Shown piece after piece: positions 1,967-64,000 of a DNA stretch of 64,000 bases (positions within the stretch are counted from its first letter, which is position 1; each line of letters opens with the position of its first letter). A program made the position numbers and the translations under genes. Under the pieces are notes generated by a model. It was not told the origin of the DNA, ran no database searches, and was given only the letters and a program-made list of their open reading frames with translations. The stretch comes from Macrostomum lignano. Taxonomy: Eukaryota. The DNA lies in NCBI GenBank assembly GCA_002269645.1, contig NIVC01000280.1:658768-722767 (forward strand), read 5' to 3'.

Positions 1967-4048
1967 TCACTTTTGATCTACGGAAATATCCAGGGTAGGG
2001 TTCAAGTTCAGCCGCCGTCGCTGTCGTCGCTGCGTCATCAGCGCGACGTCCAGCGCGCACAGACAGACGAAGCCGACGAAGGTGGACGCGCCGAGCACGC
2101 AGAATGACAGCTGGTAAGTGTCCGTGACGTCCTTCAGCGCGCCCGCTGTCGGCGGTCCGACGGCCACGCCGAAGCCGAAGCAGAGGATCAGCAGGCCGAT
2201 GCCGGAGCGGGACCGCTCCCTGCCGATCAGGTCAATCAGCATGCAGTACAACTGGCTCATGAACAGCCCGGAGGTCAGGCCGAACGCTCCCGAGATCAGG
2301 ATGAACGGTATTAAATTTTGCATGAAGGCGAAGGCTGTGATGCTGGAGGCGGTGAGCAGCATGCCGAGTGTCCAGATGCGCCTTCGATGCGGCACCAGGT
2401 GGGGGATGTCGAAGAACAGCCCCACTGAGAATCTGGACACAGTGTCGCAGGCGCCTGGGCAGAAAATGTGCGTAATTTTTAATTTAATAATATGATGGTA
2501 AATTTGCAGAAATAGAAAGAAATAAAAAGAAATAGTTATTTCTGCACTAAAAAACGGCACCCAAAACAGTAAATTTTCACCGCAACGTCCTACTGCAGAA
2601 AGAATCCTGCTTACTAAACCATAAGTCCCGCATGGACTTTCGAATCTTCGATCGCCTTTGGGTTATAGGAATTAAGTACATTTACATCAAGTACACCAAT
2701 ACATTTGGACGAGCATCGAATGTTCACCGAATCTATAATACGAGCATAATATCGAAGGCAAGTCGGACATAGATCATACATCGCGCATTTTACAGCTTGT
2801 CAGTGCAGAACTGCGCGTCTAGTGCAGTTAATTAGAACTCTCCTATTTCCGTAGTGTGTTTTGGCGAAACCCGTCTTCAAAACGAAGTATGCATAGTTAA
2901 TAAGTACTTGATGCGAACCTACCGGATATGGATATGAGCAGAACAGATGTCATGTCGTCCAGACCGCGAAGCTGCGCATGGTGCGGCAGGATCACCGCCA
3001 CGGACTTGAAGCCCGACGAGATGAACAGAGTGGCGGCGGCCAGCAAGCAGAAGTACGGATTGAGGAACAGCTTCAGATCGAAGTTGGCCCACAGCTCCAT
3101 GCAGAAGCCCCGACCGCTTCGCTCCAGGGACGTCCTTGACTTGATCGTTGTCATGGATTGGCCCAGGACTTTCTCACCGGTGGAATCCTTGGAGTTTTTG
3201 TTTTCAGCGGTTTCACTCTGACCTGCTGTATCGATGAGTGCCTCAGAAGTCGCGTCTGCAGCCTCCGCCTCGAGCGCTCCATTTGCTGACTTCTTCCCAG
3301 CAGGCAGCGGGTAAAGCAGAGCGCCGCACACCACCAGATTGAGCGACAGGCCGCTCAGAATGAGCATACAGCCGCGGAATGAGTACACCTGGATGAGGTA
3401 CTGGGTGAGCAGAGGCAGCACGAAGCTGCCCACTCCGGTGCCCGCGGTCGCCAAGCCGAGGGCGGTCGCCTTGCGTCGGCTGAAGTAGTCGTTGACAGCC
3501 AAGAGGCCAGAAGTGTAGGCGAGGCCGTTGCCGACTCCCGTCATGCAGCCGAGGGTCAGGTAGATGAGCGACAGACTGCGGCAGAACGAGCTCAGCAGCA
3601 TGCCGAGGAAGGAGGTGACGCCACCAGCCATCATGACCCTGCGGCAGCCAAAATACTTGCAGAGAACGCCGGTAATGGGGCCTGAAAGTCATCGGTGTAA
3701 ACATTTTTGCTGCTGGGTGACTCAGAAACTGAATAACTCACGTTGTGTGCCAGACAAATGCAATACAAGCTCTAGATCAGTCTTCTCTGAAGTCTCTTAA
3801 AATCTGTAATCTGATCATTTTCGCGGAAACGCAACTTGAACCTTGCACTCACCGCTCATGAACCTGGAAGCGAACAGCAAAGCGCTGAAGCCGGCAGTGG
3901 AGGCAGAAGACTGCTGCAGCTCTTTGAGGATCTCCCTGTAGAACACCCCAGACGCCCTGTCGAGCCCGCCGGCCAGAATGTGCATGCAGTGACCCGCCAG
4001 CAGCACCATCCAGCCCCAGCCACCGTCCGGTGCTGCACTTTGAGACAT
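1967..4048 (-). CDS. Monocarboxylate transporter family (SLC16/MCT, MFS) protein, copy 1, about 480 aa, 3 exons
   Basis: Exons 4048-3853, 3681-2923 and 2454-1967 total 1443 nt, with GT-AG junctions and matching phases (1,1). N-terminal MCT signature PDGGWGWMVL; [15 protein letters not shown]; TM8 CDTVSR; GPPTAGALKD. Confidence 0.93.
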
Positions 4049-6208: not shown

Positions 6209-9200
6209 TCAGGTAGCGATCTCAACAGTCGTGGCTTCTGGATTCGACAATCGTTGACGCCGACCCCGCAGCAGCAGTACGACGTCCAGCACGCACAGGC
6301 AGACGAAGCCAGCGAAAGTGGCCGCGCCGAGGGCACAGAACGACAGCTTATAGGAGCCGCTGATGTCCTTGATTGCCCCAGCCAGAGGCGGCCCGATCGC
6401 CACGCCGACACCGCGGCAGAGGATCAGCAGGCCGATGCCGGTTCGGCAGCGCTCCCGGCCGATCAGGTCGCCAAGCACGCAGTACAGCTGGCTGACGAAC
6501 AGCCCGGAGGTCAGGCCGAACGCAACCGACACGAGCACAAACGGAGCCAGGCTGTGCATGAAGGCGAAGGCTGCGATGCTGGAGGCGGTGAGCAGCATGC
6601 CGAGTGTCCAGATGCGCCTGCGGTGCGGCACCAGGCGGGACGTGTCGAACAGCAGGCCGAGGGAGAACCGCGACACCGTGTCGCAGGCGCCTGCGGATCG
6701 GTGCGTGAGAGGAGCTATCCGTCCTTTCCTGGACACTGCATGATCACTAACAGCTACTAGAACAACTCCAGTCTCTTTGGACACACCGCCGTAATCCTAT
6801 AGGCACCTCATTGCTTATGCAGACATCCACTGTAATTTAAACATCGCAAATAGTTTCAACATTAATAATTAATTTTTGCAGGAAATTTTTGGGTGCTCTC
6901 CTTCAGCGACACCGTCCCGAAACCAGCGCTGAGGCAATTCTGCCCATTTCGCTGACTCCAAAGCACATACAAGCGCGCCAGTGCTGTACGCAGGCTCACA
7001 AAGGGTGTACAGAGGCCCTGAATTTCTAGATTCGTCAGGCATGTGCAAACCGTGTCTCGGGGCCTGGCCCTGGTGGCTGTGAATCGCACGACAACCCGCC
7101 AAGGACTACGATCAAGTAAAAGGACGGGAAACCCCTGGCCTTGGTGGCTGTGAGTCGCACGACAACCCGCCAAGGACTACGATCAATTAAAAGGACGGGA
7201 AACCTCGTTTCTTAGAAAATTTTAGGAGCAGGAGGCAGACCCAATGTTCATCTTTTGATATGTTTTGCCTTTCGTATAGCTCCATTGATATTCATAGAGC
7301 TTTTCGTTTAGAAAATTAGGATTCTGTGTCAATTTTTTATTCTACGTACAATTGTACATGTCCTGTGCATAAGAACCATTAACATGACACGGCTCGGCTC
7401 GTCGGTTTTATGAATCTATTTTATCATTCTTAGCTGACTGTGTAACAATATGTGTAACAGAGATTATAAAATAGATTTAAAAAATCAACGAGTCGAGCTG
7501 TGCCATGCATTTACATCGCCGTTGTCAGCACTCGGATCAACCAGTGGGTGGCTTCAAAGCCCAGGGAGAGGTGGGCAATCGCCCCAGACTGCCGGCAATC
7601 CCGCGCGGCTGTCCCCTGTCCTTCCTCCGCCCTGCGCAGGGCCCTGCTTGGACTCAACCGCAGGGACATCAGGGCGGTGACCATGGCCCTCTCGGGTCAT
7701 GGCTGTTTTGCCAGGCATCGTCACCTCCATGGAAAAATCCGCAGTGAGGGATGCCCATTCTGCCTATCCGGTGTCGAGAATGCGAGCACTTTATCTGTGA
7801 ATGCCCCGCCTTTACTCAGGACAGGCTCACCTACCTCGGCCCAAACCCGGACCTCTCCGAGGTTTTCAGGCCCGAGAACCTCTGCTAGCTCGTCCGCTAC
7901 CTAAGGACTACCGGGCGAGCGACAATCCACCTCCTGGACTCTCCGGAGGGGGACCGCACTGCGGACACCGGCACCACCGGAACTCCCTGCGCGACACCGC
8001 AGCACTAGCTGCCCGTGGTTGCCAGGGGTTAGCAAAATGGGCGGCAACGCCTCCTCGCTGCTTCCGGACGCACGGAGCCCCCTGCAGCTCAGTCAAGTAA
8101 GTGCCATGCATTTTTATGATTTTTAGGTACAGGGAATGTACGTAGTATAAAAGATGAAAGAGTATCGGAACCCACCTAAGGAACCCTAACTCTGTACACT
8201 ATCTCTGTCTTGGAAGTTGGCTCTCCAAGCAGGCGTGAATCGCACGAACTCAGGGGGGTCGTGGATCGAGAGCGAGACGGCTGAGCTACCCTGCCCCCAT
8301 TGCACCAGTTCAGGAAATGATTGCTTTATCCGCAGATTGCCTGCAAACAGCTCACCAGCAATGGAGATCAGCAGCACGGAGGTGGTTCTGGTCAGGCCCT
8401 TGAGCTGGCCGTGGTGCGGCAAAATCACCGCGACAGGCTTGAAGCCGGCAGAGATGAACAAAGCCGCCAGCGCGTACACGCTGAACTGCCAGTTGAGGAA
8501 CAGTTTCAGGTCGAAATTCTCCCACAACTGGATGAAGAACCGACGACAGGGGCTCACAGGTGCAGGGTCAGCTGTTTGCAACGGCTGTGCATCAGCTGAC
8601 ACTGGTTGCTTGGCAGAATGTTCCTCATCGGGTTTCATTCCGTCTCCATTCTTCTCTGCGCCTTCCACTGCCCGCAGTGCCACTGACTCGGCGGGCTTTT
8701 CCTCACCGACTGCAGCCTGCGGCAGCGGGTAAAGCAGAGCGCCGCACACCACCAGATTGAGCGACAGACCGCTCAGAATGAGCATACAGCCGCGGAATGA
8801 GTACACCTGGATGAGGTACTGGGTGAGCAGAGGCAGCACGAAGCTGCCCACTCCAGTGCCCGCGGTCGCCAAGCCGAGGGCGGTCGCCTTGCGTCGGCTG
8901 AAGTAGTCGTTGACAGCCAAGAGGCCAGAAGTGTAGGCGAGGCCGTTGCCGACTCCCGTCATGAAACCAAGGGTCAGGTAGATGAGCGACAGACTGCGAC
9001 AGAACGAGCTCAGCAGCACGCCGACGAAGGATATGAGGCCTCCAGCCATCATTACTTTTCGACAGCAGAAGAACTTGCATAGTACCCCCGCTACTGGGCC
9101 TTGATAAAAATATTTTGCACGAAATACATGTAAAAGCATTCATACATGTACATCCCTGTCTGAGAAACGTTCACAGAGTAATAACACAGGGATTCAGATC

Positions 9201-10910: not shown

Positions 10911-13098
10911 TTTGCCTTTGCCTTACTATCAAAATGCTTTTATATCTTGGAGACTATTTGATGAGTGCTAAGCCTACTTTAAATGATCAAGTCTTTATTA
11001 TCAACTTAGCTAGAATGATCTTTGCTTTTCTCAGCAATTTCCTTTATCTTTACGCCTTTATAAGCTAATAATAATATATGTTGAAAAAAAACTAGCAATA
11101 TATTACTTAGCAACTATTCATTCACTACCTAGGCAGGTGGGGCTCTTCTTAACTGAGAATGTAGCCAAGTGAATATACTCAATAATATTAAAAAGTTGCT
11201 ATCCTTTGCCCTAATATCTTTCAACTAGAGTCTAACTAACACCTAGTCATTCTTTTTTTATATTAATGATTAAAAAATAAAAACTAGGCCTAGAAAGAAT
11301 CTTTAATCCATATATCTAATCTTTGCTATCTACTCTTCAATTTTTTCTTATTTAGCCCAACTCTGTCATGTGGTACAAGTTTTATCATTCAAAGTCAATG
11401 CTAAGCTAGAAATAATTAGACATACAAAGGTAAAGTGACAACCTTTTATGCTATTGAGTATATATTCTTGTTAATGCTTTCTTTATATGCCATGCTATTA
11501 GCAAAATGCTAGGGCCTACTCTAGTGGCTAAGCAATTTGAGCCAAACTAGCTATTTAAAAGGGTATAATAGCCTAAGTTGAGCAAGTTTTGAGATAGCTC
11601 AATAATAACCTCATTGCAATTGAGGTTGATACCAATCTTCTAAGTTTTCTTTTGACAACTAATATACAAAATACATAGCTAGGTTCTATAGATAGCCACT
11701 ATTGCATTTACAAAAGCAGTAAAGCTTAATACCTTAATATCTACTCCATTTTAAGATATATTACTTAAAATCTGACTGCCTTTATATAGTATTAGGCTTT
11801 TGCCAATGTTGATACTTGATAGCAAAGTATGTAGTTGGTTTGACAAAGGTTTTAAGCCTCAAGCACAAGCAAAAAGGTTAATTTTTATAAATTGCATTAT
11901 CTAGGTTCTTGGCATTGCAATTATAGAATCATATAAAGCCTATGATATTTTTAAACTAATTATAAAAAAGGCAGGAAGGTTGGCTTAAATATGAGAAGTG
12001 ATTGAAAAAAATTGACTAGTAAATATTCAATTTAGGCTTCTTATTTAGCCTTATATATTGTGCAGGCACAAAAACCCACAGATTTTCAAATTTAATTTGG
12101 GCTACAGTCCTTCTATTAAACTATCTTGGGTAACATATCTGGCTCTTAAACATTCATAAGCTCTTTCCAAGCTCTCGCATTTTTTAGTCCAAAATACGCT
12201 AAAAATTGTTGCCTGTCAAGAACTTCTCAATAAAAGATGCATTTTTATTAGCTTGATCTGGTAGATTCCAGGATGAATTGCAACCATTTGTTCCTAGAAA
12301 TTTAATACATGGATGTAGTTGATTGTTATCATATTCAAATATAATATTCTAGGCTTCTTATTGTTCTATAATTTAATTTTTTCTTCTTCGAAATTGGCCT
12401 TATCCTTGGAGTCCAAGTTAGACTTGTTTAGACTTAACAGTTTGGAATCAAGACCATATCTGAATCTTGCAATGAATAAAGTTTATTTAGATAAGGTCTT
12501 CTGAAACCCATGACATTTAGAAAACTTAGGAATTTTGCAGATTATTTCATAGAGAGAAAAGTGTTTTTTTTGTCTGTCACCAACACTTCTAAACTAATAG
12601 AGGACATTGACATACATGTATGTATAAAATCTTTCACTCTATAGTCTTTATAACTAGAATAGCGATATAGGGTTGAATAGAAAGAAAGTGTCTATTGACC
12701 TAAATTTGACCTATCCAACTGAAACAAAGTGACAAATATCTTCACTGCCTTGAAGAGGTTAAGGTCAATTGCATATACAATATCCTGAATCTGTGTAATA
12801 GACAAGTAAATATCATCTTTACCTAAATGCTTTGCAAGTTTCAAAGCTTTTTATGAGATGAACTCTTCTCTTGTCCTAAAAGTTGAGGACTTAGGCAACA
12901 GATTTTCAATGCCACATGTGAATTGTGTGGTTGGGGTGGTTGGTGACTCAAGTTAAGATAAATGCAGTTCCAGCCATTTTTGTACAATAAATAATTAATT
13001 AGCTATGGATAAATTATGGGAAATTTTTGGTTACAGTGGAACTCTACTTTCAATTGTTGATCACTCAGTCAGAGCTCTTCCAGACGCCAACTCTGGCC

Positions 13099-14288
13099 AT
13101 GCTAGCTGACGCATCAGCGCCTAGTCCACGCCAAGCCAGTCTGGGCAGTGCTGCCAAGAGCTGGGGCGCCACACTTTACTGTCTGGGCCGGCGGGCCACC
13201 AGCGCTGTGGCTTCTACTGCGGCTGCCGCTGCCGCTGCTGCCATGGCCGTCACCGACTCTGGGCAGCAGCAGCAGCAGCAGCAACAGCAAGCTTCTCTGG
13301 CCTCCTCGGCCGCTGCAGAGCCGCCCTGGTCTGGCCTGGAGCCGGGTCCGCGCAATCAGATTTTATCGCTGGCTGAGGATCCTCGCAATTTTCTCCGCCC
13401 ACCGCCTGCCAGCTGCGGCTTCGAGTTCTGCTTGGAGCCGGTACTGCCATCGGCTATGGCCGCGCTGGAGGCCGACCCGGCGCTCAGGCAGATGCGATTC
13501 AGGCTGGTGCCGAGGCGGCTGGCCGAGGAGCAGTTCTGGAGGAACTATTTCTATAGGGTATGGAGCTGAGTCTTGGCTGCTGGCTGGCTGTGCCTCTTTC
13601 ATGCCTGTTAAGTGATGCTGTAGCTACCCACTACCCATGTCTCCTGCTAGCCCCCAGTGTCCCCTGCTAGCCCCCAGTGTCCCCTGCTAGCCCCCAGAGT
13701 CCCTTGCTAGCCCCCAGAGTCCCTTGCTAGCCCCCAGAGTCCCTTGCTAGCCCCCAGTGTCCCCTGCTAGCCCCCAGAGTCCCTTGCTAGCCCCCAGTGT
13801 CCCCTGCTAGCCCCCAGTGTCCCCTGCTAGCCCCCAGTGTCCCCTGCTAGCCCCCAGTGTCCCCTGCTAGCCCCCAGTGTCCCCTGCTAGCCCCCAGAGT
13901 CCCCTGCTAGCCCCCAGAGTCCCTTGCTAGCCCCCAGTTCCCCTGCTAGCCCCCAGTGTCCCCTGCTAGGCCAGCCTTATTTGGATACAATGTTGACATT
14001 TCCCAACCTCAGGTTAGCGTGATCCGCCGCTCCGCGCAGCTCTCAGTATCCACTCCAGCCCTAGCAACTGTTGCTAGGGACGCGAGAGCGCATTCGCCGG
14101 CCGAGGCCTCTGAATGCTCGTCAGCCTGCAGCAGCGATAGCTTTGAGCGAGTGCCGTCCAGAGAGGCTCTTGAGGCCGAGGTCGGTGATGATGTCGTTGA
14201 AATTGTTTACAATGATTGGGAGCGGGAACTGCAGCGGGAGCTGGCCGGACTCGAACCTATAACCTCGGGCAGCCAGCCGAAGGACTAG
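13099..14288 (+). CDS. SYAP1: Synapse-associated protein 1 (SAP47)-like BSD-domain protein, about 244 aa, 2 exons
   Basis: Exons 13099-13557 and 14013-14288, phase 0. PPW..QILSLAEDPRNFLRPPP..MRFRLVPRRLAEEQFWRNYFYR|VSVIRRSAQL and C-terminal DWERELQREL match SYAP1. The start ATG is assumed; an upstream exon is not excluded. Confidence 0.9.
13643..13969. repeat. 20-bp minisatellite (ctagcccccagtgtcccctg) filling the SYAP1 intron
   Basis: About 16 tandem units visible. Confidence 0.97.
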
Positions 14289-49410: not shown

Positions 49411-52400
49411 TCAGTCACCGTTAACAGCGGGACTGTCGGCCTCTCCAAAGTCTGAAATGCGGTGACAGGCAGTCACTCATGAACGAATTCATGCACTCAA
49501 ATCAAACATACGCATGAACTCATAAAATTTATCATCTCACTCACCCACCCTCTCATTCAATCACCCACTCAATAATTCACTCACCCACCCACCCACTCTC
49601 TCACTCACTCACTTACTCACTCAATCCCTCACTCACTCACTCACTCCCTCAGTCACTCACTCACTCACTCACTCACTCCCTCACTCACTCCCTCACTCAC
49701 TCCCTCCCTCACTCACTCACTCCCTCCCTCACTCACTCACTCACTCACTCACTCACTCACTCACTCACTCACTCACTCACTCACTCACTCACTCACCCTC
49801 TGCCTCGTTGACATCAAGCTGGAGTGAGCCGGCAGATTTCTGGCCATTCCTATCACCGGCAGTCCCGGAAATCAGGTTCTCCTTCACCAGGTTGTGCAGC
49901 AGGCATTTGTACACGAAGGCGAGCTGGCTCTGCGCAGCAAATTGAAATGTAAAAATCATAATTCATAAATCATGTGAACCCACGGTTTGCAAATAATCTT
50001 TTACAGGTGGGTTTGAAATCTTTTTGAAAGTTTTTAAACCTCCAACCTAAAAAAGCCTACACTGCCTACTTACCGAACAGTAGCTATAAGTAGCATGATA
50101 CGAATCAACCGATATAGAAATGTTCATTGAATTAAAAAGCAACATTGACAAATAGCACCACTCTGAATCCGCAGTGAGTAGACCGTCCTCTTTTAAGTGG
50201 GCCGAAAAAGCCCCCCCCCCCACAGGATCAAGTGTGGGGTCAGCTAGGGACATCCGCAGGGCCTTTGCGATCCAGGGCAGGGAGCGATCAACAAATATAG
50301 CTAAAAACTAGGAAAGCCTCCTCTCGATGCTCGCTCGATCTCTGCCTCCCTAAAGCGAACACAGTAATTGCGGGACCGCCCGCCAGGCCAGAGCTGAGAG
50401 ATGTGAAAGCTCGTGCTGGCAATTATGGGGGCCTGGCGGGGGTTGGGGTCTCCGCTTCCCTATTCCCAGTGGTGTTACATGCCGCTCATGTACGAAACAA
50501 TGCAATATGAGTCCGATAAAATTGCCTATGTTCCTAACCGAACGAACTTACAAGTTCAAATTTGCAGGATTTTTAAAGCGAGAGGCTGAAACTGTTGTTA
50601 AGGTTTTAAAGAGCAAATTTAATCAATATTGCGTAGACTATGGCCAAGGCCAGTCGTCTATGACCAAGGCTAGTTGTCTTTGACCAAGGCCAGTTGTCTA
50701 TGGCCAAGGCTAGCTGTCTATGGCCAAGGCCAGTTGTCTATGGCCAAAGCCAGCTGTCTATGGCCAAGGCCAGCTGTCTATGGCCAAGGCCAGCTGACTA
50801 TGGCCAAGGCCAGCTGTCTATGGCCAAGGCTAGCTGTCTATGGCCAAGGCCAGTTGTCTATGGCCAAGGCCAGTTGTCTATGGCCAAGGCCAGTTGTCTA
50901 TGGCCAAGGCTAGCTGTCTATGGCCAAGGCCAGCTATCTATGGCCCAGGCTAGCTGTCTATGGCCAAGGCCAGCTATCTATGGCCCAGGCTAGCTGTCTA
51001 TGGCCAAGGCCAGCTATCTATGGCCCAGGCTAGCTGTCTATGGCCAAGGCCAGCTGTCTATGGCCAAGGCCAGCTATCTATGGCCAAGGCCAGTTGTCTA
51101 TGGCCAAGGCCAGTTGTCTATGGCCAAGGCTAGCTGTCTATGGCCCAGGCTACGTACCCTGCTGTGCACCATGCCCGGCCGGCTCAGCCTCAGCCCGACA
51201 ACGGCGGCCGGCACGTCCACTTGCTGGCTGGCGCGCACTCCGTCAATGCTGAAGGACAGCAGGCAGAGCAGGACGCCGGTCCGGCCGACGCCGCTGTCGC
51301 AGTGGACGACGGTCGGCCAGTCCGGCCTGGCGGTGGCGCCCACCTCAGCGGCAAAGCGGCAGAAGCCGGCAGGGTCTAGGCCGGACCAGTCCGCCGACAG
51401 CGGCAGGCCCAAATACTGCAGGTGGCGAAGCCGGCGGGTCTCGCTGGAGTCGCCGGTCACGGACACTGTCAGCTCACGGCGGATCAGGTTTCCGTCGTCT
51501 AGCGTCTCCTCAGTTTCCATAGCAACTGTGTACTGGCCGTAGCAGACGCTGGTCCCAGTCTCGTCCGGCCAGTATTTGGCGCAGGCGCTCCGGCCTTGTT
51601 CAACACAGTCCGTTACCATGGCAACTAGGCGAACCCCGGACTCCCAGATCATCTGCCAATGCTGGCCGAGCGTCTCCTGCAGAGGTCCTTGGCAGGCGAT
51701 GTACCGGCGATTGGACACTCGAAGAGGGCTAGCGTTGACGTAGTCGGACGGGGCCCTGGTCAGCCGCAGCAGCGGGTCCTCGCAGCCGCCGCCTTCGTCG
51801 GAGTCCGCCTCATCGAGATTTTCCTCAGAATCCTCGTCGAAATCTGGCATGTCGGCCGAGGGTTTCGGCAGCGACAGTTTGACCCGGTTCGAGTCGTAGG
51901 GCAGCACGTTGGTGTAGCGGTTCTTCAGGGTGTTGCGCAGGCTCTGGCCGCATTCTACACTGAAGATGAGGCGCTCGCAGTTCGAGCCGATGAGGTTCAG
52001 CCGCTCCAGCTGCTTTTCCAGCTCCTCCTCTCCCTCCTTCGTCTGCAGCAGCCGTCTGGCGTGGTCAGCGAATCCGCTGAGCTGGATGGAGGTGCGGCTG
52101 GCGGAGGCGCGACGGGTGGGGAGTTATAGAGGGGTTTCAAGAGAGTTCGGGATCTAATGGAGAGTTGAAAGGGAGATCTGGTGGGGATCTGAGAGGGGGA
52201 TCTAGTTTGATCTGAGATGGGGATCTAGTGGGATCTGAGAGGGAGATCTAGTGGGATCTGAGAGGGGGATCTAGTGGGATCTGAGAGGGAGATCTAGTGG
52301 GATCTAAGAGGGAGATCTAGTGGGATCTGAGAGGGAGATCTAGTGGGATCTGAGAGGGGGATCTAGTGGGATCTGAGAGGGAGATCTAGTGGGATCTGAG

Positions 52401-53900
52401 AGGGGGATCTAGTGGGATCTGAGAGGGAGGTCTAGTGGGATCTGAGAGGGAGATCTAGTGGGATCTGAAAGGGAGATCTAGTGGGATCTGAGAGGGAGAT
52501 CCAGTGGGATCTAAGAGGGAGGTCTAGTAAGATCTGAGAGGGAGATCTAGTGGGATCTGAGAGGGGGATCTAGTGGGATCTGAGAGGGAGATATAGTGGG
52601 ATCTGAGAGGGAGATATAGTGGGGATCTGAGAGGGGGATCTAGTGGGATCTGAGAGGGGGATCTGGTGTGCTCTGAGAGGGGGATCTAGAGGGATCTGAG
52701 ATGGAGGTCTAGTGGGATCTGAGAGGGAGATCTAGTGGGATCTGAGAGGGAGATCTAGTGGGATCCGAAAGGGAGGTCTAGTGGGGATGAGCAAGATCTA
52801 GCAAAGTTAAGAGGATTTCCACCCCCATGCGTCCCCCTTCTCCCGCAGCTTGCAGCCTATACATGTACGCGAGAGCAAGTTTAAACCCCAGATATTTTTA
52901 TTCGCCAAAAAATTTCTTCCTTATCGCAGCTAATTTCCTTCCTGAAGCAGAAATTTAATTGTGTTCTCAATTTAATTGCCAGAAGCAGCTTCCCCGGTGC
53001 TTAGCGGTAGACGAACAAGTCATTCCTTTTTTCTTTCTCCAAGCATCAGAGAGGCTCGCATTTAATTGCATCCCTATTCCTTCTGGCGAGCGCAAGCAGG
53101 TCTTGAGATTTCTGCTTCTTAGGGTTAGGGTTAAGGGCTATGGCTAAGGGTTAGGAGTTGTACGAGCATGTTTGAGCCATTACGAATTTGATCTGGAGTG
53201 ACTGGAAGACTGTCTGATTATTTTTGCTCATTTTTATTACTCATGGACGTCACTTCCTCCTTACTGCTTAATCCAGCCTCCAACCCACTGCTTCCATCCT
53301 TTATCCTACTGCTTCCATCCTTTATCCTACTGCTTCCATCCTTTATCCTACTGCTTCCATCCTTTATCCTACTGCTTCCATCCTTTATCCTACTGCTTCC
53401 ATCCTTTATCCTACTGCTTCCATCCTTTATCCTACTGCTTCCATCCTTTATCCTACTGCTTCCATCCTTTATCCTACTGCTTCCATCCTTTATCCTACTG
53501 CTTCCATCCTTTATCCTACTGCTTCCATCCTTTATCCTACTGCTTCCATCCTTTATCCTACTGCTTCCATCCTTTATCCTACTGCTTCCATCCTTTATCT
53601 CATTGCTTCCATCCTTTATCCTACTGCTTCCATCCTTTATCCTATTGCTTCCACCCTCCAATCCACTGCTTCCACCCTCCAACCCACTGCTTCCACCCTT
53701 TATCCCATTGCTTGCATCCTTTATCCCATTGCTTCCATCCTCCAACCCACAGCTGCAGGCGCCCACAATCCTGGCTACTCCCGAGCCCGCGCTCACCTTT
53801 TCCGCTTGCCCCTCTTGCCGCCGGGTGTCAGCAGCTTCTTCACCCTCAGCTCCACAGAATCCTCAATATCCTCGGCAGAGGCCGACGCGCAGTTCCCCAT
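49411..53900 (-). CDS. Classical PTP-domain protein (PTPN14/21/Pez-like C terminus) with an N-terminal MGNCAS lipidation motif; probable pseudophosphatase, 405 aa, 4 exons
   Basis: Exons 53900-53797, 52097-51158, 49929-49797 and 49451-49411 total 1218 nt, phases 2,0,1. PTP motifs KNRYTNVLPYD, DYVNAS, YIACQGP, WQMIWE, CAKYWP, VHCDSGVGRTG and RPGMVHSRSQLAFVY. Confidence 0.9.
49545..49796. repeat. (TCAC)n / (GTGA)n microsatellite starting at the PTP intron 3 donor
   Basis: On the gene strand the intron begins gtgagtgagtgagt... Confidence 0.97.
50637..51150. repeat. 20-bp minisatellite in PTP intron 2
   Basis: Unit tggccaaggccagctgtcta, abutting the donor at 51157. Confidence 0.97.
52170..52798. 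repeat. 23-bp minisatellite in PTP intron 1
   Basis: Unit gatctagtgggatctgagaggga. Confidence 0.97.
53285..53745. repeat. 21-bp minisatellite in PTP intron 1
   Basis: Unit ctgcttccatcctttatccta; gives the LLPSFIL and RIKDGSS ORFs. Confidence 0.97.
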
Positions 53901-54756
53901 GCCGCCTTCGTCTGGCCCGCTCGGTCGGGTGCTTTTGTCTCCGCTTCGGAGCACAGAAGGCCGCGTACTCTGCGCTCGCGTCTATCAAGCTGCTAGCAGG
54001 ATTTCTTGCGGAGAGAGAGAGAGAGAGAGAAGCAGAGGAACAGGCGGGTCAGGTACGCGGCGGTTAATTGAGCCGCAGATAGGTCAATCAGAGTCGGCCG
54101 CGGCCTAGACAGCGAATTAAGACTTTGTACTGGCAGATAAGGACTCGAATTTGGCTGTCTTAATGGCTCTGTATGCCTGGCAGGGGGGGGGAGGGAGGCA
54201 CTGAGCTGATAAACTGAGCACGTCTGCACGGGACACCCTCACGAGGGACCCCACCGGATTGGCCCCCGCAGCCCCACAGCCGATTTTGCCGCTTTTACCC
54301 TCGAGAAGCAGAACGAGCCAGAACGAGGCTCTCACTGCGAACTCTGACGGAAACACAGAATTTGTTTCAAACCACCACATTTTCCCCCAGCACCTCACCC
54401 AATTCCCATGCATGGGAGCGGCAGCTAGGGATGCGGAAAACACCCGAGGAACCGGGCCCACTAACGCTTTCAGTTCGTTTCGAACGCTTTGCTTTCGACT
54501 AAAAATGATAGCAATACGTATTTTTAAACTCGATTCGAATATCCCATCCGACAAACACTTGTTTACATTTTTTTCGCTCGCTTATTAATTTGAGCCATGC
54601 TGCAGCTGCGGGAGCTTAAAGAGGCCACTTGGACCGAGCAGTCTGGGGGACCCGCATCTGCAACCATTCAAGCAATTAGTTAATCAGCAGCGCTAGCACC
54701 CGCGCCTCGGGTGCAGAGCCTGCCTGCATCTGCCTACGCATCCTTCAACCTGCCCC

Positions 54757-56255
54757 CCGGTCCTTCACTGGTCACCCCCACTACCCCCCTACCCCCGGTC
54801 CTTCACTGGTCACTCCCACTACCCCCTACCCCGGTCCTTCACTGGTCACCCCCACTACCCCCCTACCCGGTCCTTCACTGGTCACCCCACCACCCCCTAC
54901 CCCCGGTCCTTCACTGGTCACTCCCACTACCCCCTACCCCCGGTCCTTCACTGGTCACCCCCACCACCCCTACCCCCGGTCCTTCACTGGTCACTCCCAC
55001 TACCACCCTACCCCGGTCCTTCACTGGTCACCCCCACCACCCCCTACCCCCGGTCCTTCACTGGTCACCCCCACTACCCCCTACCCGGTTCTTCACTGGT
55101 CACCCCCACTACCCCCCTACCCCGGTCCTTCACTGGTCACCCCCACTACCCCCCTACCCCCGGTCCTTCACTGGTCACCCCCACTACCCCCTACCCCCGG
55201 TCCTTCACTGGTCACCCCACCACCCCCTACCCCCGGTCCTTCACTGGTCACTCCCACCACCCCCTACCCCGGTCCTTCACTGGTCACTCCCACTACCCCC
55301 CCCCCCCGTTCCTTCACTGGTCACCCCCACTACCCCCCTACCCCGGTGATTCACTGGTCACCCCCACTATCCCCTACCCGGTCCTTCACTGGTCACCCCC
55401 ACTAACCCCCCTACCCGGTCCTTCACTGGTCACCCCCACTAACCCCCCTACCCCCAGTCCTTCACTGGTCACCCCCACTATCCCCCTACCCGGTCCTTCA
55501 CTGGTCACCCCCACTAACCCCCTACCCCAGTCCTTCACTGGTCACCCCCACTATCCCCCTACCCGGTCCTTTACTGGTCACCCCCACTAACCCCCTACCC
55601 CCGGTCCTTCACTGGTCACCCCCACCACCCCTACCCCCGGTCCTTCACTGGTCACTCCCACTACCACCCTACCCCGGTCCTTCACTGGTCACCCCCACCA
55701 CCCCCTACCCCCGGTCCTTCACTGGTCACCCCCACTACCCCCTACCCGGTCCTTCACTGGTCACCCCCACTACCCCCCTACCCGGTCCTTCACTGGTCAC
55801 CCCACTACCCCCTACCCGGTCCTTCACTGGTCACCCCCACTACCCCCCTACCCCCGGTGATTCACTGGTCACCCCCACTACCCCCCTACCCCGGTGATTC
55901 ACTGGTCACCCCACTACCCCCCTACCCCCGGTGATTCACTGGTCACCCCCACTACCCCCCTACCCCGGTGATTCACTGGTCACCCACACTATCCCCTACC
56001 CGGTCCTTCACTGGTCACCCCCACTAACCCCCTACCCGGTCCTTCACTGGTCACCCCACTAACCCCCCTACCCCGGTCCTTCACTGGTCACCCCACTAAC
56101 CCCCTACCCCCAGTCCTTCACTGGTCACCCCCACCGCTCTCCCTCACCCCGGTGATTCACTGGTCACCCCCACCGCTCTCCCCAATGCCCCGGTGATTCA
56201 CTGGTCACCCCACCGCTCTCCCCCTGTCCCTGGTGATTCACTGGTCACATGTCAC
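54757..56255. repeat. About 33-36-bp C-rich minisatellite
   Basis: Unit ccccggtccttcactggtcacccccactacccccta with variable C-run lengths. Confidence 0.97.
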
Positions 56256-56814
56256 CCCACCGCTCCCCCCTTCAGCAGTAGGTCTCTCAGTGGGCAAAGT
56301 GGGTAAATAAAAGCGAGTCGAAAATCCGATTGCTGTAGTCAGTTAGCAGTTAAAATCGGTCATGCAAATCATCAGCTCAGATTAATATTTGAGGCCAGCC
56401 GGCAACAAGGAAAGTTTTCAAATTCAAATTCTGCACAGCATATATTTCGCCAATAAGTGCAACTAAAAGCAACAACCGAAAAAACGACAAAAAAGCACGG
56501 CATGATATTACAGATATTGCTACTAACTAAGTAGAGCAACGCGCATTTAATGGTTGGAATTCTTTCTTTTCACAGCTTTAAAACTCTCTGGAATGTTGAG
56601 TTCTTGGCAAAGTTATAATTACTGTTTGAAACAAATTCAATTTAATTTCAAACAACGTTAATTACAGAAAGAGCATTAAGAGATTTACCTTAAGAGATTA
56701 AGAGATTAGTTGTTGAGGACATAAGCAAGACTGACTGACAAGTGTGCAACTTCTGATGTACCATTTTTTCTATGGAGTCTGTAAACACAGCCTTATAGCA
56801 ACTGAAATCAGAAA

Positions 56815-57710
56815 CCAGTTGGGGATCTCACAGCAACTGAAATCCCATGGCAGTTGGGGATCTCACAGCAAATGAAATCCCATCTCAGTTGGGGATCTCA
56901 AGGCAACTGAAACCCCCATCTCGATTGGGGATCTCACAGCAACTGAAATCCCATGGCAGTTGGGGATCTCACAGCAACTGAAATCCCATGGCAGTTGGGG
57001 ATCTCACAGCAACTGAAATCCCATGGCAGTTGGGGATCTCAAGGCAACTGAAATCCCCATCTCGATTGGGGATCCCACAGAAACTGAAATCCCATGGCAG
57101 TTGGGGATCTCAAGGCAACTGAAACCCCCCATCTCGATTGGGGATCTCACAGCAACTGAAATCCCATGGCAGTTGGGGATCTCACAGCAACTGAAATCCC
57201 ATGGCAGTTGGGGATCTCACAGCAACTGAAATCCCATGGCAGTTGGGGATCTCAAGGCAACTGAAATCCCCCATCTCGATTGGGGATCCCACAGAAACTG
57301 AAATCCCATGGCAGTTGGGGATCTCAAGGCAACTGAAATCCCCCATCTCGATTGGGGATCTCACAGCAACTGAAATCCCCCATCTCAATTGGGGATCTCA
57401 CAGCAACTGAAATCCCCCATCTCAATTGGGGATCTACAGCAACTGAAATCCCCCATCTCAATTGGGGATCTCACAGCAACTGAAATCCCCCATCTCAATT
57501 GGGGATCTCACAGCAACTGAAATCCCCCATCTCAATTGGGGATCTCACAGCAACTGAAATCCCCCATCTCAGTTGGGATCTCACAGCAACTGAAATCCCC
57601 CATCTCAGTAGGGGATCCCACAGCAACTGAAATCCCCCATCTCAGTTGCGGATCTCACAGCAACTGAAATCCCCCATCTCAGTTGCGGATCTCACAGCAA
57701 CTGAAATCCA
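56815..57710. repeat. About 35-bp quasi-palindromic minisatellite just 3' of the PQLC1 stop codon
   Basis: Units ggggatctcacagcaactgaaatcccatggcagtt and ...aaatcccccatctcaattggggatctc. Confidence 0.96.
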
Positions 57711-57758: not shown

Positions 57759-59304
<1,546 letters not shown>

Positions 59305-61165: not shown

Positions 61166-64000
61166 TATAGATTAATATCTTATGCATATATTGCATGGAA
61201 TAACAAAGTTATTTTATTCTTCTATTTTAATACTTTGATGATATTATAAGCCTATATATTCTTACATGATCATATATCTATATCATTTTATATGTATATA
61301 TATTATTTTATATGCCAATTTAGAAGAGTAAGCAAAATATACAATATTCAATAATGCCTCTTACTAAGTACATGACAATGTTGCCTAAAAGTGCACTAAG
61401 TCTAAGACCCAATATAGCCATTATAGCTATTATATTAAAATTATAACTGAATAATATTAATACATAATAGTATAATTAATACTAGGCATATAAGTATAAT
61501 AATCTACTAAGGCTAATATATAGGCCTAGTAATAAATAATAATGGCAATCTATTTTTAAAAGCCTAAATTTAATATAATGTTAGTCCTAATAATAAAAAA
61601 TAAAGAAACAATTTGTTTGTTTTTTTAAACAAAAGTTAAATAATAATAAATAGGCCTAGGGCCTAATGAATTTAAATAAATCAGGTTGGTTTATACTAGC
61701 TTAGGCATTGGCCATACAAGCTTTGCATAGGCCTACATTGGAATTAAGAAGATGGTCCAATTTTTTTCATAATATTTATTCAGCATTAGGGGCCTATATC
61801 AATATTGGGCACTGCATGCATTGCTAGTCCTACTGTGTTACTTAGCAGTTTCTATTATGTTAATATAGGCTATAGCAAACACACTTGTAAATTATTGCAA
61901 AAAAGCAAAGATCTAAATTAAGAATGACTAAAACTATTGTTGATTGCTGCTTTTCTTTTCTTTAGGACTACATCTTGAAAACAAAATAAATGTTTCTGAC
62001 CTTCTGTACTCAACTCAACGGCTATGTTCGTCTAGGCCCATGCATTGCTAGGCCCGGCCCTACCTACTAAATGTATCATCATGCAGTCGTCAGCAGCATC
62101 TATAATAGAACAGAACCACGCATGCACAATTACACAGAGTGTACTTGTACTGATAATGCGACCTAATGTAATGTAATTAAATGTATAGGTGGAACCTCCA
62201 CATGTAAAATGTAAGGAATACTTGAGTAGTCCTTGGTAAAATGCTTTATGGTGATGTTATGTAAGGTTGGTTCTTGGAAATTATGCTTCTTGTGATGCGA
62301 AGCCCTAGTTGTTGAGAAATATTTCGAAATTTTAATTTAATCGCTTCAATTTTAATTTCAATCGTGTTGAATTAGCAGCGAAGGTATAAATTTCAATTTG
62401 TTCAAAGCTGAATATTCAGACCAAAAATTTTTATTTTAGTGAAGTGAACACAGCCGATACGCTCGTATTTGCTTATTTGCGAGTTTATCGATTTTAATTT
62501 AAAAAAGATTCCTAGGCAGGGCATTCTCCATCCGTCGCCGTCACTCTTCCTCCGCGTCTCCCTGCAGTCACTTATGTGTCACGTCCGCTAACCAACCACA
62601 GGCGGTTAATTCAGCTTTAACTCAGGCGTCCAAGCCATTTTCAAAAGTCAGGTTGCTAACATGTTGAACGGACCATGGCAACAGGGCGCGATCAAATAGA
62701 TGATCGATCACGGGGCAGTTGAGTTGACTACATGTTTAAAAAGAGAGCTGTTTTGGCTTGTTCATAATCTGTTTATAGCTAGAGATGGCTATTGCAAATC
62801 AGATGGTCCATTCGATAATAATTACATGTATATATCTAAGATTCATGCAGACTTATTAAAATTTAAACGAAGTGCATTCTACTTTACTATTAGCAAAGAC
62901 ACGTGACATGACTATTAGTCGATAACAATGCTCAAACAAGCAATTTTCGCTTGTGATCATAAGACACATTGGAGGAAGACATTTGTAAGAGCTCGGAATT
63001 TTGATCAGGAGATGGGGCAGAGTGACAGCGAGACAGGAGAGTGATAATTAGGTGACGAAAGATGATCGACAGAGAGACGTTGTCAGATTGACAGGGAGAC
63101 GGAGGCGAGTGACAGGGAGACAGGTGAAAAGTAACAGGGAGACGGATGAAATTGATGGGTTTCGACCTTCGGGCTCCTTGTTAGGGAAGCCTTCGGGCCT
63201 CAGGCTCAGAAATAAATCAATTAGAGACCTGGCCCCCCACTCCTGTCAGATGGTCAGCCCCATGGTAGCTTGATCGTGTGGCGAGCAGTCTAGGTCCTAT
63301 AGCTAAGAGAGGGACTAAGCGAGAGACGAGCAGGGAGAATTTCGAAGGTAGAAATTAGCTAATCCGCAGATCAACTAACTTGCTGCCACCAGACTGTGCG
63401 CCCTGGCTCACCACACCGGGACTCTCGAAATCGGGCTTCCGACTAGAAGGGGCTTTGCACTTACCTGCCAACTAGTGTCTTTTTGCTGTCAATCTCGAAG
63501 TCATAGCCGATGATAAGGACACTGCTGGACTAGATCGCATTGGCCATGCAGGTACACAGAGGGGACTTGTGGCAGGGGATTCTTGCGGTGGCGAGTCTAT
63601 GGGTAGCTACATGTACTATTACATTGCTAAATACGAAGGTTTGTACTTTTGGCCTTCAACGCGCCAACTAGCCTCTCCTAGCGCTGATGATAGACTAACT
63701 CGAACTTCAGAGACCGCATGATTCATCACCCGAGCCGCTTGGCGAACCTAGAGTGCACAGAGTACACCTCTGGAGCCGATTCTGCACTCCTGCAGCTTTG
63801 CTCACTGATTTGATAGATTGATCGACTGAGAACTGCCTTGCCATTGGTCCACTGTGACCGGCGCCTACTAGCTTAGGCTACTCATCTGAGCCATCGGCGA
63901 ACAAAGAAATAAAACCGATAAAAATCTGTTAGATTTAACCTCCTTGATCACTTCACACTTCAGATTGAATTGGAGTTTTAGACTACTAGCAGTATTATTG

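What the first reader, a model, noticed from the sequence alone, without database searches (positions are those of the whole stretch)
49411..53900. Lipid-anchored PTP pseudophosphatase: MGNCAS N terminus plus three altered catalytic loops
Seen: exon 1 encodes MGNCASASAE..KKLLTPGGKRGKRK and splices in phase to a single PTP domain with no FERM, receptor or transmembrane part. The pTyr-recognition loop KNRY is intact, as are the catalytic Cys and Arg. However, the WPD loop reads YLGLPLSAD (no general-acid Asp in position), the P-loop is HCDSGVGR instead of HCSAGxGR, and the Q-loop is MVHS instead of MVQT. An acidic insert (DFDEDSEENLDEADSDE) lies before DYVNAS. Established: MGxxxS is the N-myristoylation consensus, Cys3 and a polybasic patch are typical second membrane signals as in Src-family kinases, and loss of the WPD Asp turns PTPs into substrate traps. 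Inference: a Src-style membrane-targeted phosphotyrosine reader or antiphosphatase, an architecture I do not know among animal classical PTPs.
Basis: partly seen in the sequence, partly recalled or inferred. Interest (0 to 1): 0.75.

Follow-up and report, generated by a model that had tools for sequence, protein, structure and literature searches.

The report
Lipid-anchored, catalytically degraded flatworm tyrosine phosphatase
A real gene of the flatworm Macrostomum lignano encodes a lone tyrosine-phosphatase domain that has lost most of its catalytic helper residues and starts with a fatty-acid anchoring motif. It is probably a membrane-tethered, near-inactive phosphatase, with no orthologue found in the searched databases and no experimental data.

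Summary
The window is Macrostomum lignano contig NIVC01000280.1. Four minus-strand exons with GT-AG introns give a 1218-nt CDS. It is identical to the 405-aa NCBI protein BOX15_Mlig033588g2, which comes from a transcript-derived annotation.

Residues 90-359 are a full classical PTP domain (PF00102, 186.6 bits; Foldseek TM about 0.8 normalised to the target).

- **Kept:** 35 of 40 strongly conserved columns, including KNRY, Cys301 and Arg307.
- **Lost or changed:**
  - the WPD Trp (Leu266, unique among 295 related domains);
  - the general-acid Asp (LPL, in a loop five residues longer);
  - the Lys120 equivalent (Ala206);
  - Cys+1 (Asp302) and Cys+2 (Ser303, the change that inactivates HD-PTP);
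  - Gln262 (His346).

The other 20 of 295 related domains with this signature are all second (D2) domains of tandem-domain PTP proteins.

The N terminus MGNCAS fits the myristoylation pattern, has Cys4, and is followed by a +9 basic stretch. In-frame stops lie 28 codons upstream. I found no transmembrane segment, FERM domain or second PTP domain.

No orthologue turned up among about 15 billion proteins; the best other hit is 39% identical. Lipidation, inactivity and phosphotyrosine binding remain untested inferences. I rate it a new variant of a known kind, of moderate interest.

The parts
53797..53900 (-). Exon 1: ATG at 53900, encodes MGNCASASAEDIEDSVELRVKKLLTPGGKRGKRK plus 2 nt (phase 2); donor AAAAG|GTGAGC
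   Evidence: identical to the N terminus of P0001
53883..53900 (-). Codons for MGNCAS: Gly2 (predicted N-myristoylation), Cys4 (candidate S-palmitoylation), Ser6
   Evidence: PROSITE PS00008 pattern is met at Gly2; coordinates checked; the modification itself is not tested
53799..53846 (-). Basic stretch RVKKLLTPGGKRGKRK. With Ser35-Arg36 (aa 19-36) the net charge is +9. Candidate second membrane signal, or alternatively an NLS-like KRGKRK
53982..53987 (-). Two consecutive in-frame stop codons (TGA TAG) 28 codons upstream of the ATG. They follow a CT-rich tract and AG dinucleotides, and there is no other ATG in between
52098..53796 (-). Intron 1 (1699 nt, GT..AG), carrying a 21-mer and a 23-mer minisatellite
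51158..52097 (-). Exon 2 (940 nt): aa 35-348, nearly the whole PTP domain in one exon
51914..51925 (-). pTyr-recognition loop KNRY (aa 93-96), intact
51746..51874 (-). Acidic insert between the RVxL and DYVNA motifs (aa 110-152, 14 Asp/Glu, net charge -11)
   Evidence: low model confidence (pLDDT about 50)
51584..51586 (-). Ala206 at the Lys120 (PTP1B numbering) position
   Evidence: Lys in 138 of 150 domains with canonical Asp181, Gln262 and Cys, but in only 35 of 127 domains lacking Asp181; coordinates
51371..51406 (-). WPD-loop equivalent LPLSADWSGLDP (aa 266-277): Trp replaced by Leu266, general-acid position occupied by Leu268 or Ser269, loop five residues longer
51275..51304 (-). P-loop HCDSGVGRTG (aa 300-309): Cys301 and Arg307 kept, Asp302 at Cys+1, Ser303 at Cys+2
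   Evidence: HD-PTP precedent
51158..51172 (-). Q-loop, first part MVHSR (aa 344-348): His346 in place of Gln262
49930..51157 (-). Intron 2 (1228 nt, GT..AG, phase 0), splitting the Q-loop; carries a 20-mer array of 25.6 copies
49797..49929 (-). Exon 3: SQLAFVYKCLLHNL... The second Q-loop Gln (Gln350) is kept, and the Tyr of QY is Leu351
49452..49796 (-). Intron 3 (345 nt). Its donor GTGAGTGAG is the first unit of a (CTCA)n microsatellite
49411..49451 (-). Exon 4: ..DFGEADSPAVNGD and the TGA stop

Best explanation
This is an expressed, lineage-restricted Macrostomum lignano gene (Mlig033588.g2). Its 405-aa product is a single classical PTP-fold domain preceded by about 35 disordered residues.

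**Likely mechanism (inferred)**
1. After Met removal, Gly2 is N-myristoylated.
2. Cys4 is then palmitoylated at a membrane.
3. The +9 basic stretch adds electrostatic binding. The domain is thereby held at the cytoplasmic face of a membrane, much as a transmembrane segment holds a receptor PTP.

**The domain**
- It keeps the phosphate cradle and the pTyr pocket (Tyr96, Cys301, Arg307, P-loop glycines, Gln350).
- It has lost the machinery for both chemical steps: the WPD hinge Trp and general-acid Asp, their partner Lys120, Ala at Cys+2 and Gln262.
- It should therefore turn over phosphotyrosine very slowly, if at all.
- It would then act by occupancy, binding, shielding or scaffolding membrane-proximal partners, rather than by bulk dephosphorylation.

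**Shown:** the gene structure, domain, motif states and absence of other domains.
**Inferred:** acylation, low activity and binding function.
For: **Gene**
- The four-exon GT-AG model equals the NCBI protein.
- That annotation was built from RNA-seq and transcript assemblies with TransDecoder ORFs.

**Fold**
- PF00102 at 186.6 bits against a cut-off of 20.9.
- PDB sequence hits reach 1e-63; those best scores are summed over the two domains of tandem chains.
- The AF2 core has pLDDT 80-90, and Foldseek gives a target-normalised TM-score of about 0.8 to PTPRB and PTPRG.
- The protein keeps 35 of 40 columns conserved at 80% or more. This is the 29th percentile of 295 related domains; the median for second (D2) domains is 36.

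**Dismantled catalysis**
- Leu266 replaces a Trp present in 290 of 296 aligned domains (the query included); no other domain has Leu there.
- Leu or Ser sits at Asp181. Outside the acidic insert, HMMER's per-position confidence is lowest in this loop, and the loop has 10 residues against a median of 5.
- Ala206 replaces Lys120, a residue that tracks Asp181 across the family.
- Ser303 at Cys+2 matches HD-PTP, where Ser1394 abolishes activity and S1394A restores it.
- His346 replaces Gln262.
- In PTP1B, D181A lowers kcat about 100,000-fold and a Gln262 mutation about 100-fold. The double mutant is a better substrate trap.
- The 20 other domains that keep Tyr/Phe, Cys and Arg but lack Asp181 and Gln262 are all second (D2) domains of tandem-domain proteins.

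**Anchor**
- PS00008 is met, with Cys4 and a +9 stretch.
- In-frame stops lie upstream and the Kozak context GGCATGG has a purine at -3.
- There is no transmembrane segment.
- Nothing coding-like lies in the 3.9 kb up to the next same-strand gene.

**Precedent that a lipid anchor can replace the receptor part**
- A myristoylation signal fused to the CD45 cytoplasmic domain restored T-cell receptor signalling.
Against: - There is no experimental datum on lipidation, localisation, activity or binding.
- I could not retrieve expression data for this gene.
- The 5' end is not mapped. The M. lignano spliced leader ends in ATG, and AG dinucleotides exist between the upstream stops and the ATG, so an extended N terminus is not excluded.
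- PS00008 is unspecific: by my reading, 3 of the 14 other MG-starting relatives also fit it.
- Asp271 and Asp276 in the lengthened loop could serve as general acid. One pairwise alignment puts SAD on WPD.
- Asp302 and Ser303 may also impair phosphate binding, which would undercut the 'trap' part.
- No orthologue is available, so conservation of Gly2, Cys4 and the altered residues cannot be checked. The two genomic copies are 99.2% identical and say nothing about selection.
- AF2 confidence is only moderate (mean pLDDT 65; the P-loop block is 56).
Confidence: 0.5

Rival explanations
1. It is an active but atypical phosphatase. Asp271 or Asp276 of the lengthened loop would act as general acid, and His346 would position the water. 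The substrate could be phosphoprotein or, given the membrane anchor, a phospholipid head group.
For: - Cys301, Arg307, His300, Thr308 and Gln350 are all intact.
- The loop contains two Asp residues, and one alignment places SAD on WPD.
- Paladin, a myristoylated protein long called an antiphosphatase, proved to be a PI(4,5)P2 phosphatase.
- PTPRQ, which has WPE, is a lipid phosphatase.
Against: - Six catalytic-support positions are changed together, including the hinge Trp and Lys120, which co-vary with a working Asp181.
- Ser at Cys+2 alone inactivates HD-PTP, which also showed no activity on PI(3,4,5)P3.
- An Asp at Cys+1 makes the P-loop more acidic. That is the opposite of the basic P-loop of PTEN-type lipid phosphatases (established knowledge, not tested here).
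Confidence: 0.2
2. The protein is real but is not lipid-anchored. Either the true N terminus differs (upstream exon, spliced-leader AUG or another start), or Gly2 is not used by N-myristoyltransferase. In that case KRGKRK acts as a nuclear localisation signal, or the protein is cytosolic.
For: - The 5' end is unmapped here.
- The spliced leader ends in ATG.
- The pattern match is weak evidence (my reading).
- KRGK fits the monopartite NLS consensus K-K/R-x-K/R (sequence; established knowledge).
Against: - TGA TAG lie in frame 84 nt upstream, with no intervening ATG.
- A spliced-leader ATG joined at the CT-rich acceptor upstream of those stops would be out of frame (my reading).
- The transcript-derived ORF starts at this Met.
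- Asn3, Ser6 and a hydrophilic stretch at 9-17 are favourable for N-myristoyltransferase. Calcineurin B begins MGNEAS (from memory).
Confidence: 0.2
3. It is a decaying duplicate without function, in a highly duplicated genome. On this view the altered motifs are simply drift.
For: - No orthologue was found and the protein sits on a long branch.
- M. lignano is a hidden polyploid with many duplicates.
- Introns and flanks are full of minisatellites.
Against: - The 405-codon ORF is intact across four exons with canonical splice sites.
- At only 35-39% identity to any relative it still keeps 35 of 40 core columns, and the losses are concentrated in catalytic-support residues rather than fold residues.
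- It is part of a transcript-derived annotation.
Confidence: 0.1

Closest known systems
Membrane-distal (D2) domains of tandem receptor PTPs (for example CD45 D2)
   Same: Same fold, and the same active-site signature: Cys and Arg kept, Asp181 and Gln262 lost. In my set, all 20 other domains with that signature are second domains of tandem-domain proteins, and one of them is annotated as PTPRC/CD45.
   Different: - It stands alone and is not preceded by an active D1 domain.
- It is slightly closer to D1 than to D2 domains (mean distance 1.34 against 1.47).
- It does not branch with D2 domains.
- It lacks even the WPD Trp, which D2 domains keep.
HD-PTP / PTPN23
   Same: A classical PTP with the Cys kept but Ser at Cys+2 (VHCSSG against VHCDSG) and no WPD Asp. 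It is catalytically inactive, and activity is restored by Ser-to-Ala.
   Different: - HD-PTP is a large Bro1/His-domain ESCRT protein with KNRH and WPE, and it has no lipid anchor.
- Here KNRY is intact, the loop is LPL plus five residues, and Cys+1 is Asp.
Engineered PTP1B D181A/Q262A substrate trap
   Same: The nucleophile is kept while the general acid and the water-positioning Gln are removed.
   Different: - This protein is natural rather than engineered.
- It has further P-loop changes that may weaken binding.
- The WPD-loop closure that helps trapping in PTP1B is unlikely without the hinge Trp.
Myristoylation-signal-CD45 cytoplasmic domain chimera (Volarevic et al. 1993)
   Same: A receptor-type PTP catalytic region held at the membrane by an N-terminal acylation signal instead of a transmembrane segment.
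   Different: The chimera is artificial, has tandem domains and is catalytically active.
Paladin (PALD1)
   Same: A myristoylated Cys-based phosphatase-fold protein first called an antiphosphatase or pseudophosphatase.
   Different: - It has a different fold subclass with four CX5R motifs, and the His before CX5R is absent.
- It turned out to be a PI(4,5)P2 phosphatase.
C. elegans EGG-4/EGG-5
   Same: PTP-like pseudophosphatases that act by binding a phosphorylated kinase activation loop.
   Different: - I found no sequence orthology with them, and no acylation motif is known to me for them.
- I could not read the primary paper.
DUSP15 / DUSP22
   Same: N-myristoylated Cys-based phosphatases (from memory; one search lists a DUSP22 paper).
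   Different: They are small dual-specificity phosphatases, not classical PTPs, and they are catalytically active.

Membership tests
Classical (class I, Cys-based) PTP domain, PF00102 | Profile match above the curated threshold over the full domain | tested here: met
   186.6 bits against a cut-off of 20.9, profile positions 1-233 of 234
Classical (class I, Cys-based) PTP domain, PF00102 | PTP fold | tested here: met
   Foldseek E about 1e-15, target-normalised TM-score about 0.8 to PTPRB and PTPRG; model pLDDT is only 65
Classical (class I, Cys-based) PTP domain, PF00102 | Signature (I/V)HCxxGxxR(S/T)G with Cys and Arg | tested here: met
   VHCDSGVGRTG, aa 299-309
Classical (class I, Cys-based) PTP domain, PF00102 | pTyr-recognition loop KNRY | tested here: met
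   KNRY 93-96
Classical (class I, Cys-based) PTP domain, PF00102 | WPD loop with hinge Trp and general-acid Asp | tested here: not met
   LPLSADWSGLDP; Leu at the Trp column is unique among 295 relatives; loop five residues longer
Classical (class I, Cys-based) PTP domain, PF00102 | Q-loop Gln262 | tested here: not met
   His346; Gln in 207 of 296 aligned domains
PTP pseudophosphatase | Fold kept while residues needed for catalysis are substituted | tested here: met
   35 of 40 core columns kept; Trp179, Asp181, Lys120, Ala217 and Gln262 equivalents changed
PTP pseudophosphatase | No measurable phosphatase activity | not testable with these tools
   Needs recombinant protein and enzyme assays
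PTP pseudophosphatase | Binds a phosphorylated ligand | not testable with these tools
   Needs pull-down or peptide-binding assays
Dually acylated (myristate plus palmitate) N termini of the Src-family / G-alpha type | Gly2 after the initiator Met, in an N-myristoyltransferase-compatible context | tested here: met
   GNCASA fits PS00008; the pattern has low specificity (my reading)
Dually acylated (myristate plus palmitate) N termini of the Src-family / G-alpha type | Cys within the first few residues | tested here: met
   Cys4
Dually acylated (myristate plus palmitate) N termini of the Src-family / G-alpha type | This Met is the real translation start | tested here: inconclusive
   In-frame TGA TAG 28 codons upstream and a transcript-derived ORF, but the 5' end is not mapped and the spliced leader ends in ATG
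Dually acylated (myristate plus palmitate) N termini of the Src-family / G-alpha type | Lipids actually attached | not testable with these tools
   Needs metabolic labelling or mass spectrometry
Receptor-type PTP (the best-scoring hits whose names I looked up: LAR/sigma-type 'netrin-G3 ligand', epsilon and CD45 types) | Signal peptide, ectodomain and transmembrane segment | tested here: not met
   Maximum hydropathy 1.35; the only Pfam matches are phosphatase-domain models; only repeats lie upstream
Receptor-type PTP (the best-scoring hits whose names I looked up: LAR/sigma-type 'netrin-G3 ligand', epsilon and CD45 types) | Tandem D1-D2 domains | tested here: not met
   One domain only; no second copy in the window
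FERM- or PDZ-containing non-receptor PTPs (PTPN3/4/13/14/21) | FERM and/or PDZ domain N-terminal to the PTP domain | tested here: not met
   Absent from the protein and from the 3.9 kb upstream. NJ groups the domain weakly with four single-domain PTP proteins, two of which carry a PDZ domain

The most novel reading that the evidence does not exclude
This may be a naturally evolved, dually acylated 'substrate-trap' classical PTP. It would be a membrane-resident phosphotyrosine-binding module, built on the same logic as the laboratory D181A/Q262A trap. It would shield or sequester specific pTyr sites (for example on Src-family kinases or receptor tails) at the inner leaflet. That would add a third kind of pTyr reader beside SH2 and PTB domains in a regeneration model animal.
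Probability: 0.2. Interest if true: 0.65.

Novelty: new variant of a known kind. Interest (0 to 1): 0.4.

Why it matters
Degenerate PTP domains are common as the second domain of receptor PTPs and in a few large scaffolds such as HD-PTP and IA-2. I found no described stand-alone classical PTP domain that pairs such a degraded active site with an N-terminal acylation signal.

If the predictions hold, this would be a compact natural example of membrane-tethered phosphotyrosine binding without turnover. It would also be a natural counterpart of engineered substrate traps and of myristoylated CD45 chimeras.

M. lignano has transgenesis and RNAi, so the localisation and function predictions can be tested directly.

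If the predictions fail, it is simply one more lineage-specific divergent phosphatase in a highly duplicated genome.

Tried and rejected
1. **Operon reading of the gene name.** I first took the '.g2' suffix to mean the second gene of a trans-spliced transcriptional unit, which would have fixed the 5' end. The methods text shows instead that the prefix marks 95%-identity transcript clusters, so I dropped this.
2. **P0002 as a paralogue.** P0002 (76% identity) looked like a divergent paralogue. At least two of the four divergent stretches I tested are frameshifted translations of the same exon 2 DNA; the other two gave no 8-residue match in any frame. It is therefore not independent evidence.
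3. **Selection from the second contig.** The second contig copy (L002) is 99.2% identical with the same protein, so it is uninformative.
4. **CK2 sites in the acidic insert.** None fits S/T-x-x-D/E.
5. **Structure-based placement of Asp271.** The tools do not give model coordinates, and loop confidence is moderate.
6. **Expression data.** The gene identifier is absent from the searchable text and from the held supplements of three M. lignano papers.
7. **Origin from a D2 domain.** The signature is D2-like, but distances and the NJ tree do not place the protein among D2 domains.
8. **Reconstructing the upstream PQ-loop protein.** I tried this in order to look up its name, but an apparent frameshift stopped it.

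Full report
**What is there**

The window is the 3' end of Macrostomum lignano contig NIVC01000280.1, assembly GCA_002269645.1. On the minus strand, four exons are joined by three GT-AG introns: 53900-53797, 52097-51158, 49929-49797 and 49451-49411. They give a 1218-nt CDS. Its translation is identical to the 405-aa NCBI protein 'hypothetical protein BOX15_Mlig033588g2'.

That annotation was built from RNA-seq and de novo transcript assemblies mapped to the genome, with ORFs called by TransDecoder (PMC5730564). The junctions are therefore transcript-derived and not ab initio.

A second contig, NIVC01003263.1, carries a 99.2% identical copy encoding the same protein. The UniRef entry P0002 (76% identity) is at least partly a frameshifted reading of the same exon 2: two of the four divergent stretches I tested match other frames.

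**The N terminus**

The ATG is the first one after two consecutive in-frame stops (TGA TAG, 53982-53987) that lie 28 codons upstream. Those stops follow a CT-rich tract with AG dinucleotides. The Kozak context is GGCATGG.

The next gene on the same strand is a PQ-loop protein that ends at 57759. The 3.9 kb in between is mostly 37-mer arrays.

The mature N terminus GNCASA fits PROSITE PS00008. Cys4 lies where myristoylated proteins are usually palmitoylated. Residues 19-36 carry a net charge of +9. There is no hydrophobic segment (maximum hydropathy 1.35).

Three caveats apply:
- The pattern is unspecific. By my reading, 3 of the 14 other relatives that begin with MG also fit it.
- The 5' end is not mapped, and the M. 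lignano spliced leader ends in ATG (PMC8629364).
- KRGKRK also resembles a nuclear localisation signal.

**The domain**

Residues 90-359 match Pfam Y_phosphatase end to end (186.6 bits). PDB sequence hits reach 1e-63 for tandem-domain chains, where the score is summed over two domains. The best are PTP-alpha, sigma and LAR. An AlphaFold model (mean pLDDT 65, core 80-90) superposes on PTPRB and PTPRG with a target-normalised TM-score of about 0.8.

I aligned the query with 295 PTP domains taken from the 13 non-self proteins of the word-based search and the 149 best non-self HMMER hits in a 1.84-billion-representative library. The query keeps 35 of the 40 columns that are at least 80% conserved. 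This is the 29th percentile of the set, and the median for second (D2) domains is 36.

**What is altered**

| Position (PTP1B numbering) | State in this protein | Comparison |
|---|---|---|
| WPD hinge Trp179 | Leu266 | Trp in 290 of 296 aligned domains; Leu in none of the other 295 |
| General acid Asp181 | Leu268 (profile alignment) or Ser269 (MAFFT) | Flank ETRRLRHLQYLG-LPL is in exact register with EKREVRHFQFTA-WPD |
| WPD loop length | 10 residues | Median 5; only 2 of 291 as long; holds Asp271 and Asp276 |
| Lys120 | Ala206 | Lys in 138 of 150 domains with canonical Asp181/Gln262/Cys, but 35 of 127 without Asp181 |
| Cys+1 | Asp302 | Ser in 216 of 296 |
| Cys+2 | Ser303 | Ala in 168 of 296 |
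| Gln262 | His346 | Gln in 207 of 296 |
| Tyr of QY | Leu351 | Tyr in 90% of the other 295 domains |
| DFW | QHW | Asp 86%, Phe 88% |

The acidic insert between RVxL and DYVNA is 44 residues against a median of 10. It is predicted to be disordered.

**Why this points to very low activity**

- In HD-PTP, Ser at Cys+2 abolishes activity and Ser-to-Ala restores it (PMC2661844).
- In PTP1B, D181A lowers kcat by about five orders of magnitude and a Gln262 mutation by about 100-fold. The double mutant is a superior substrate trap (PMC10267100).
- In my set, the 20 other domains that keep Tyr/Phe, Cys and Arg but lack both Asp181 and Gln262 are all second (D2) domains of tandem-domain proteins.

The losses cluster in catalytic-support residues while fold residues are kept. 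That pattern fits a protein selected for its structure and phosphate cradle but not for turnover.

Against overconfidence:
- Two Asp residues sit in the longer loop, and one pairwise alignment puts SAD on WPD.
- Asp302 and Ser303 may also weaken phosphate binding.
- Paladin, a myristoylated 'antiphosphatase', was later shown to be a PI(4,5)P2 phosphatase (PMC7857541).

**Relatives**

No orthologue was found. The best other protein in the full HMMER scan is 39% identical, and the word-based search at 90% clustering found only P0002. Other Macrostomum species may not be represented in these protein collections; I did not check.

Of the ten best-scoring hits whose names I looked up, the named ones are receptor PTPs of the LAR/sigma ('netrin-G3 ligand'), epsilon and CD45 types. 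Per domain, the query is about equally distant from everything. A neighbour-joining tree puts it on a long branch (92nd percentile), weakly beside four single-domain PTP proteins, two of which carry a PDZ domain. None of the listed hits other than P0002, the same locus, starts with MGxC.

Literature searches for myristoylated classical PTPs returned nothing relevant. An engineered precedent does exist: a myristoylation signal fused to the CD45 cytoplasmic domain restored T-cell receptor signalling.

**Verdict**

- 'Single-domain, receptor-less classical PTP with a degraded active site and an acylation-type N terminus' is well founded.
- 'Lipid-anchored', 'pseudophosphatase' and especially 'phosphotyrosine reader or antiphosphatase' remain predictions.

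My approximate estimates:

| Claim | Probability |
|---|---|
| Real gene and PTP domain | 0.97 |
| Strongly impaired pTyr hydrolysis | 0.75 |
| N-myristoylated | 0.65 |
| Acts by binding pTyr | 0.25-0.3 |

It is a new variant of a known kind, of moderate interest.

Noticed in passing
window 49536-49796, 50638-51150, 52151-52785, 53287-53741: Every intron of the gene carries a tandem array: (CTCA)65, a 20-mer x25.6, a 23-mer x27.5 and a 21-mer x21.7. The exon 3 donor GTGAGTGAG is itself the first unit of the (CTCA)n array. The 20-mer array ends 7 nt from the exon 2 donor.
   Followed up: partly
window 54755-56211 and 56797-57709: Two large 37-mer minisatellites (about 40 and 25 copies) fill most of the 3.9-kb space between this gene and the upstream PQ-loop gene.
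   Followed up: no
window 57759-59229 (minus strand): This is the upstream PQ-loop gene (PF04193). Around the second PQ motif the reading frame appears to shift by one base between ..PQFYRNLKN and RSTDGMS... The two contig copies are annotated with different lengths (216 and 128 aa). This may be an assembly indel or a small intron. A 28-mer array lies in its intron.
   Followed up: partly
window 51158-52097: Nearly the whole PTP domain (aa 35-348) lies in one 940-nt exon, and the only intron inside the domain splits the Q-loop. This is unusually intron-poor for an animal PTP domain, and it hints at intron loss or a retroposed origin (inference only).
   Followed up: no
window 1967-3634 and 6209-9139 (minus strand): Two neighbouring paralogous MFS-type transporter genes (PF07690, E 1e-21 to 1e-25) share long near-identical stretches. 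This looks like a local tandem duplication.
   Followed up: partly
window 13027-13569 (+): An ORF with a BSD domain (PF03909, E 9e-12) preceded by poly-Ala and poly-Gln runs.
   Followed up: no
L002 (NIVC01003263.1) against L001: A second contig holds the same locus at 99.2% identity. It differs mostly by indels and repeat-copy number, and is probably an allele or very recent duplicate in this hidden polyploid.
   Followed up: partly
window 63901-64000: The window ends at the end of the contig (record position 722767). Only about 10 kb of sequence therefore exists upstream of the gene in this assembly copy.
   Followed up: yes
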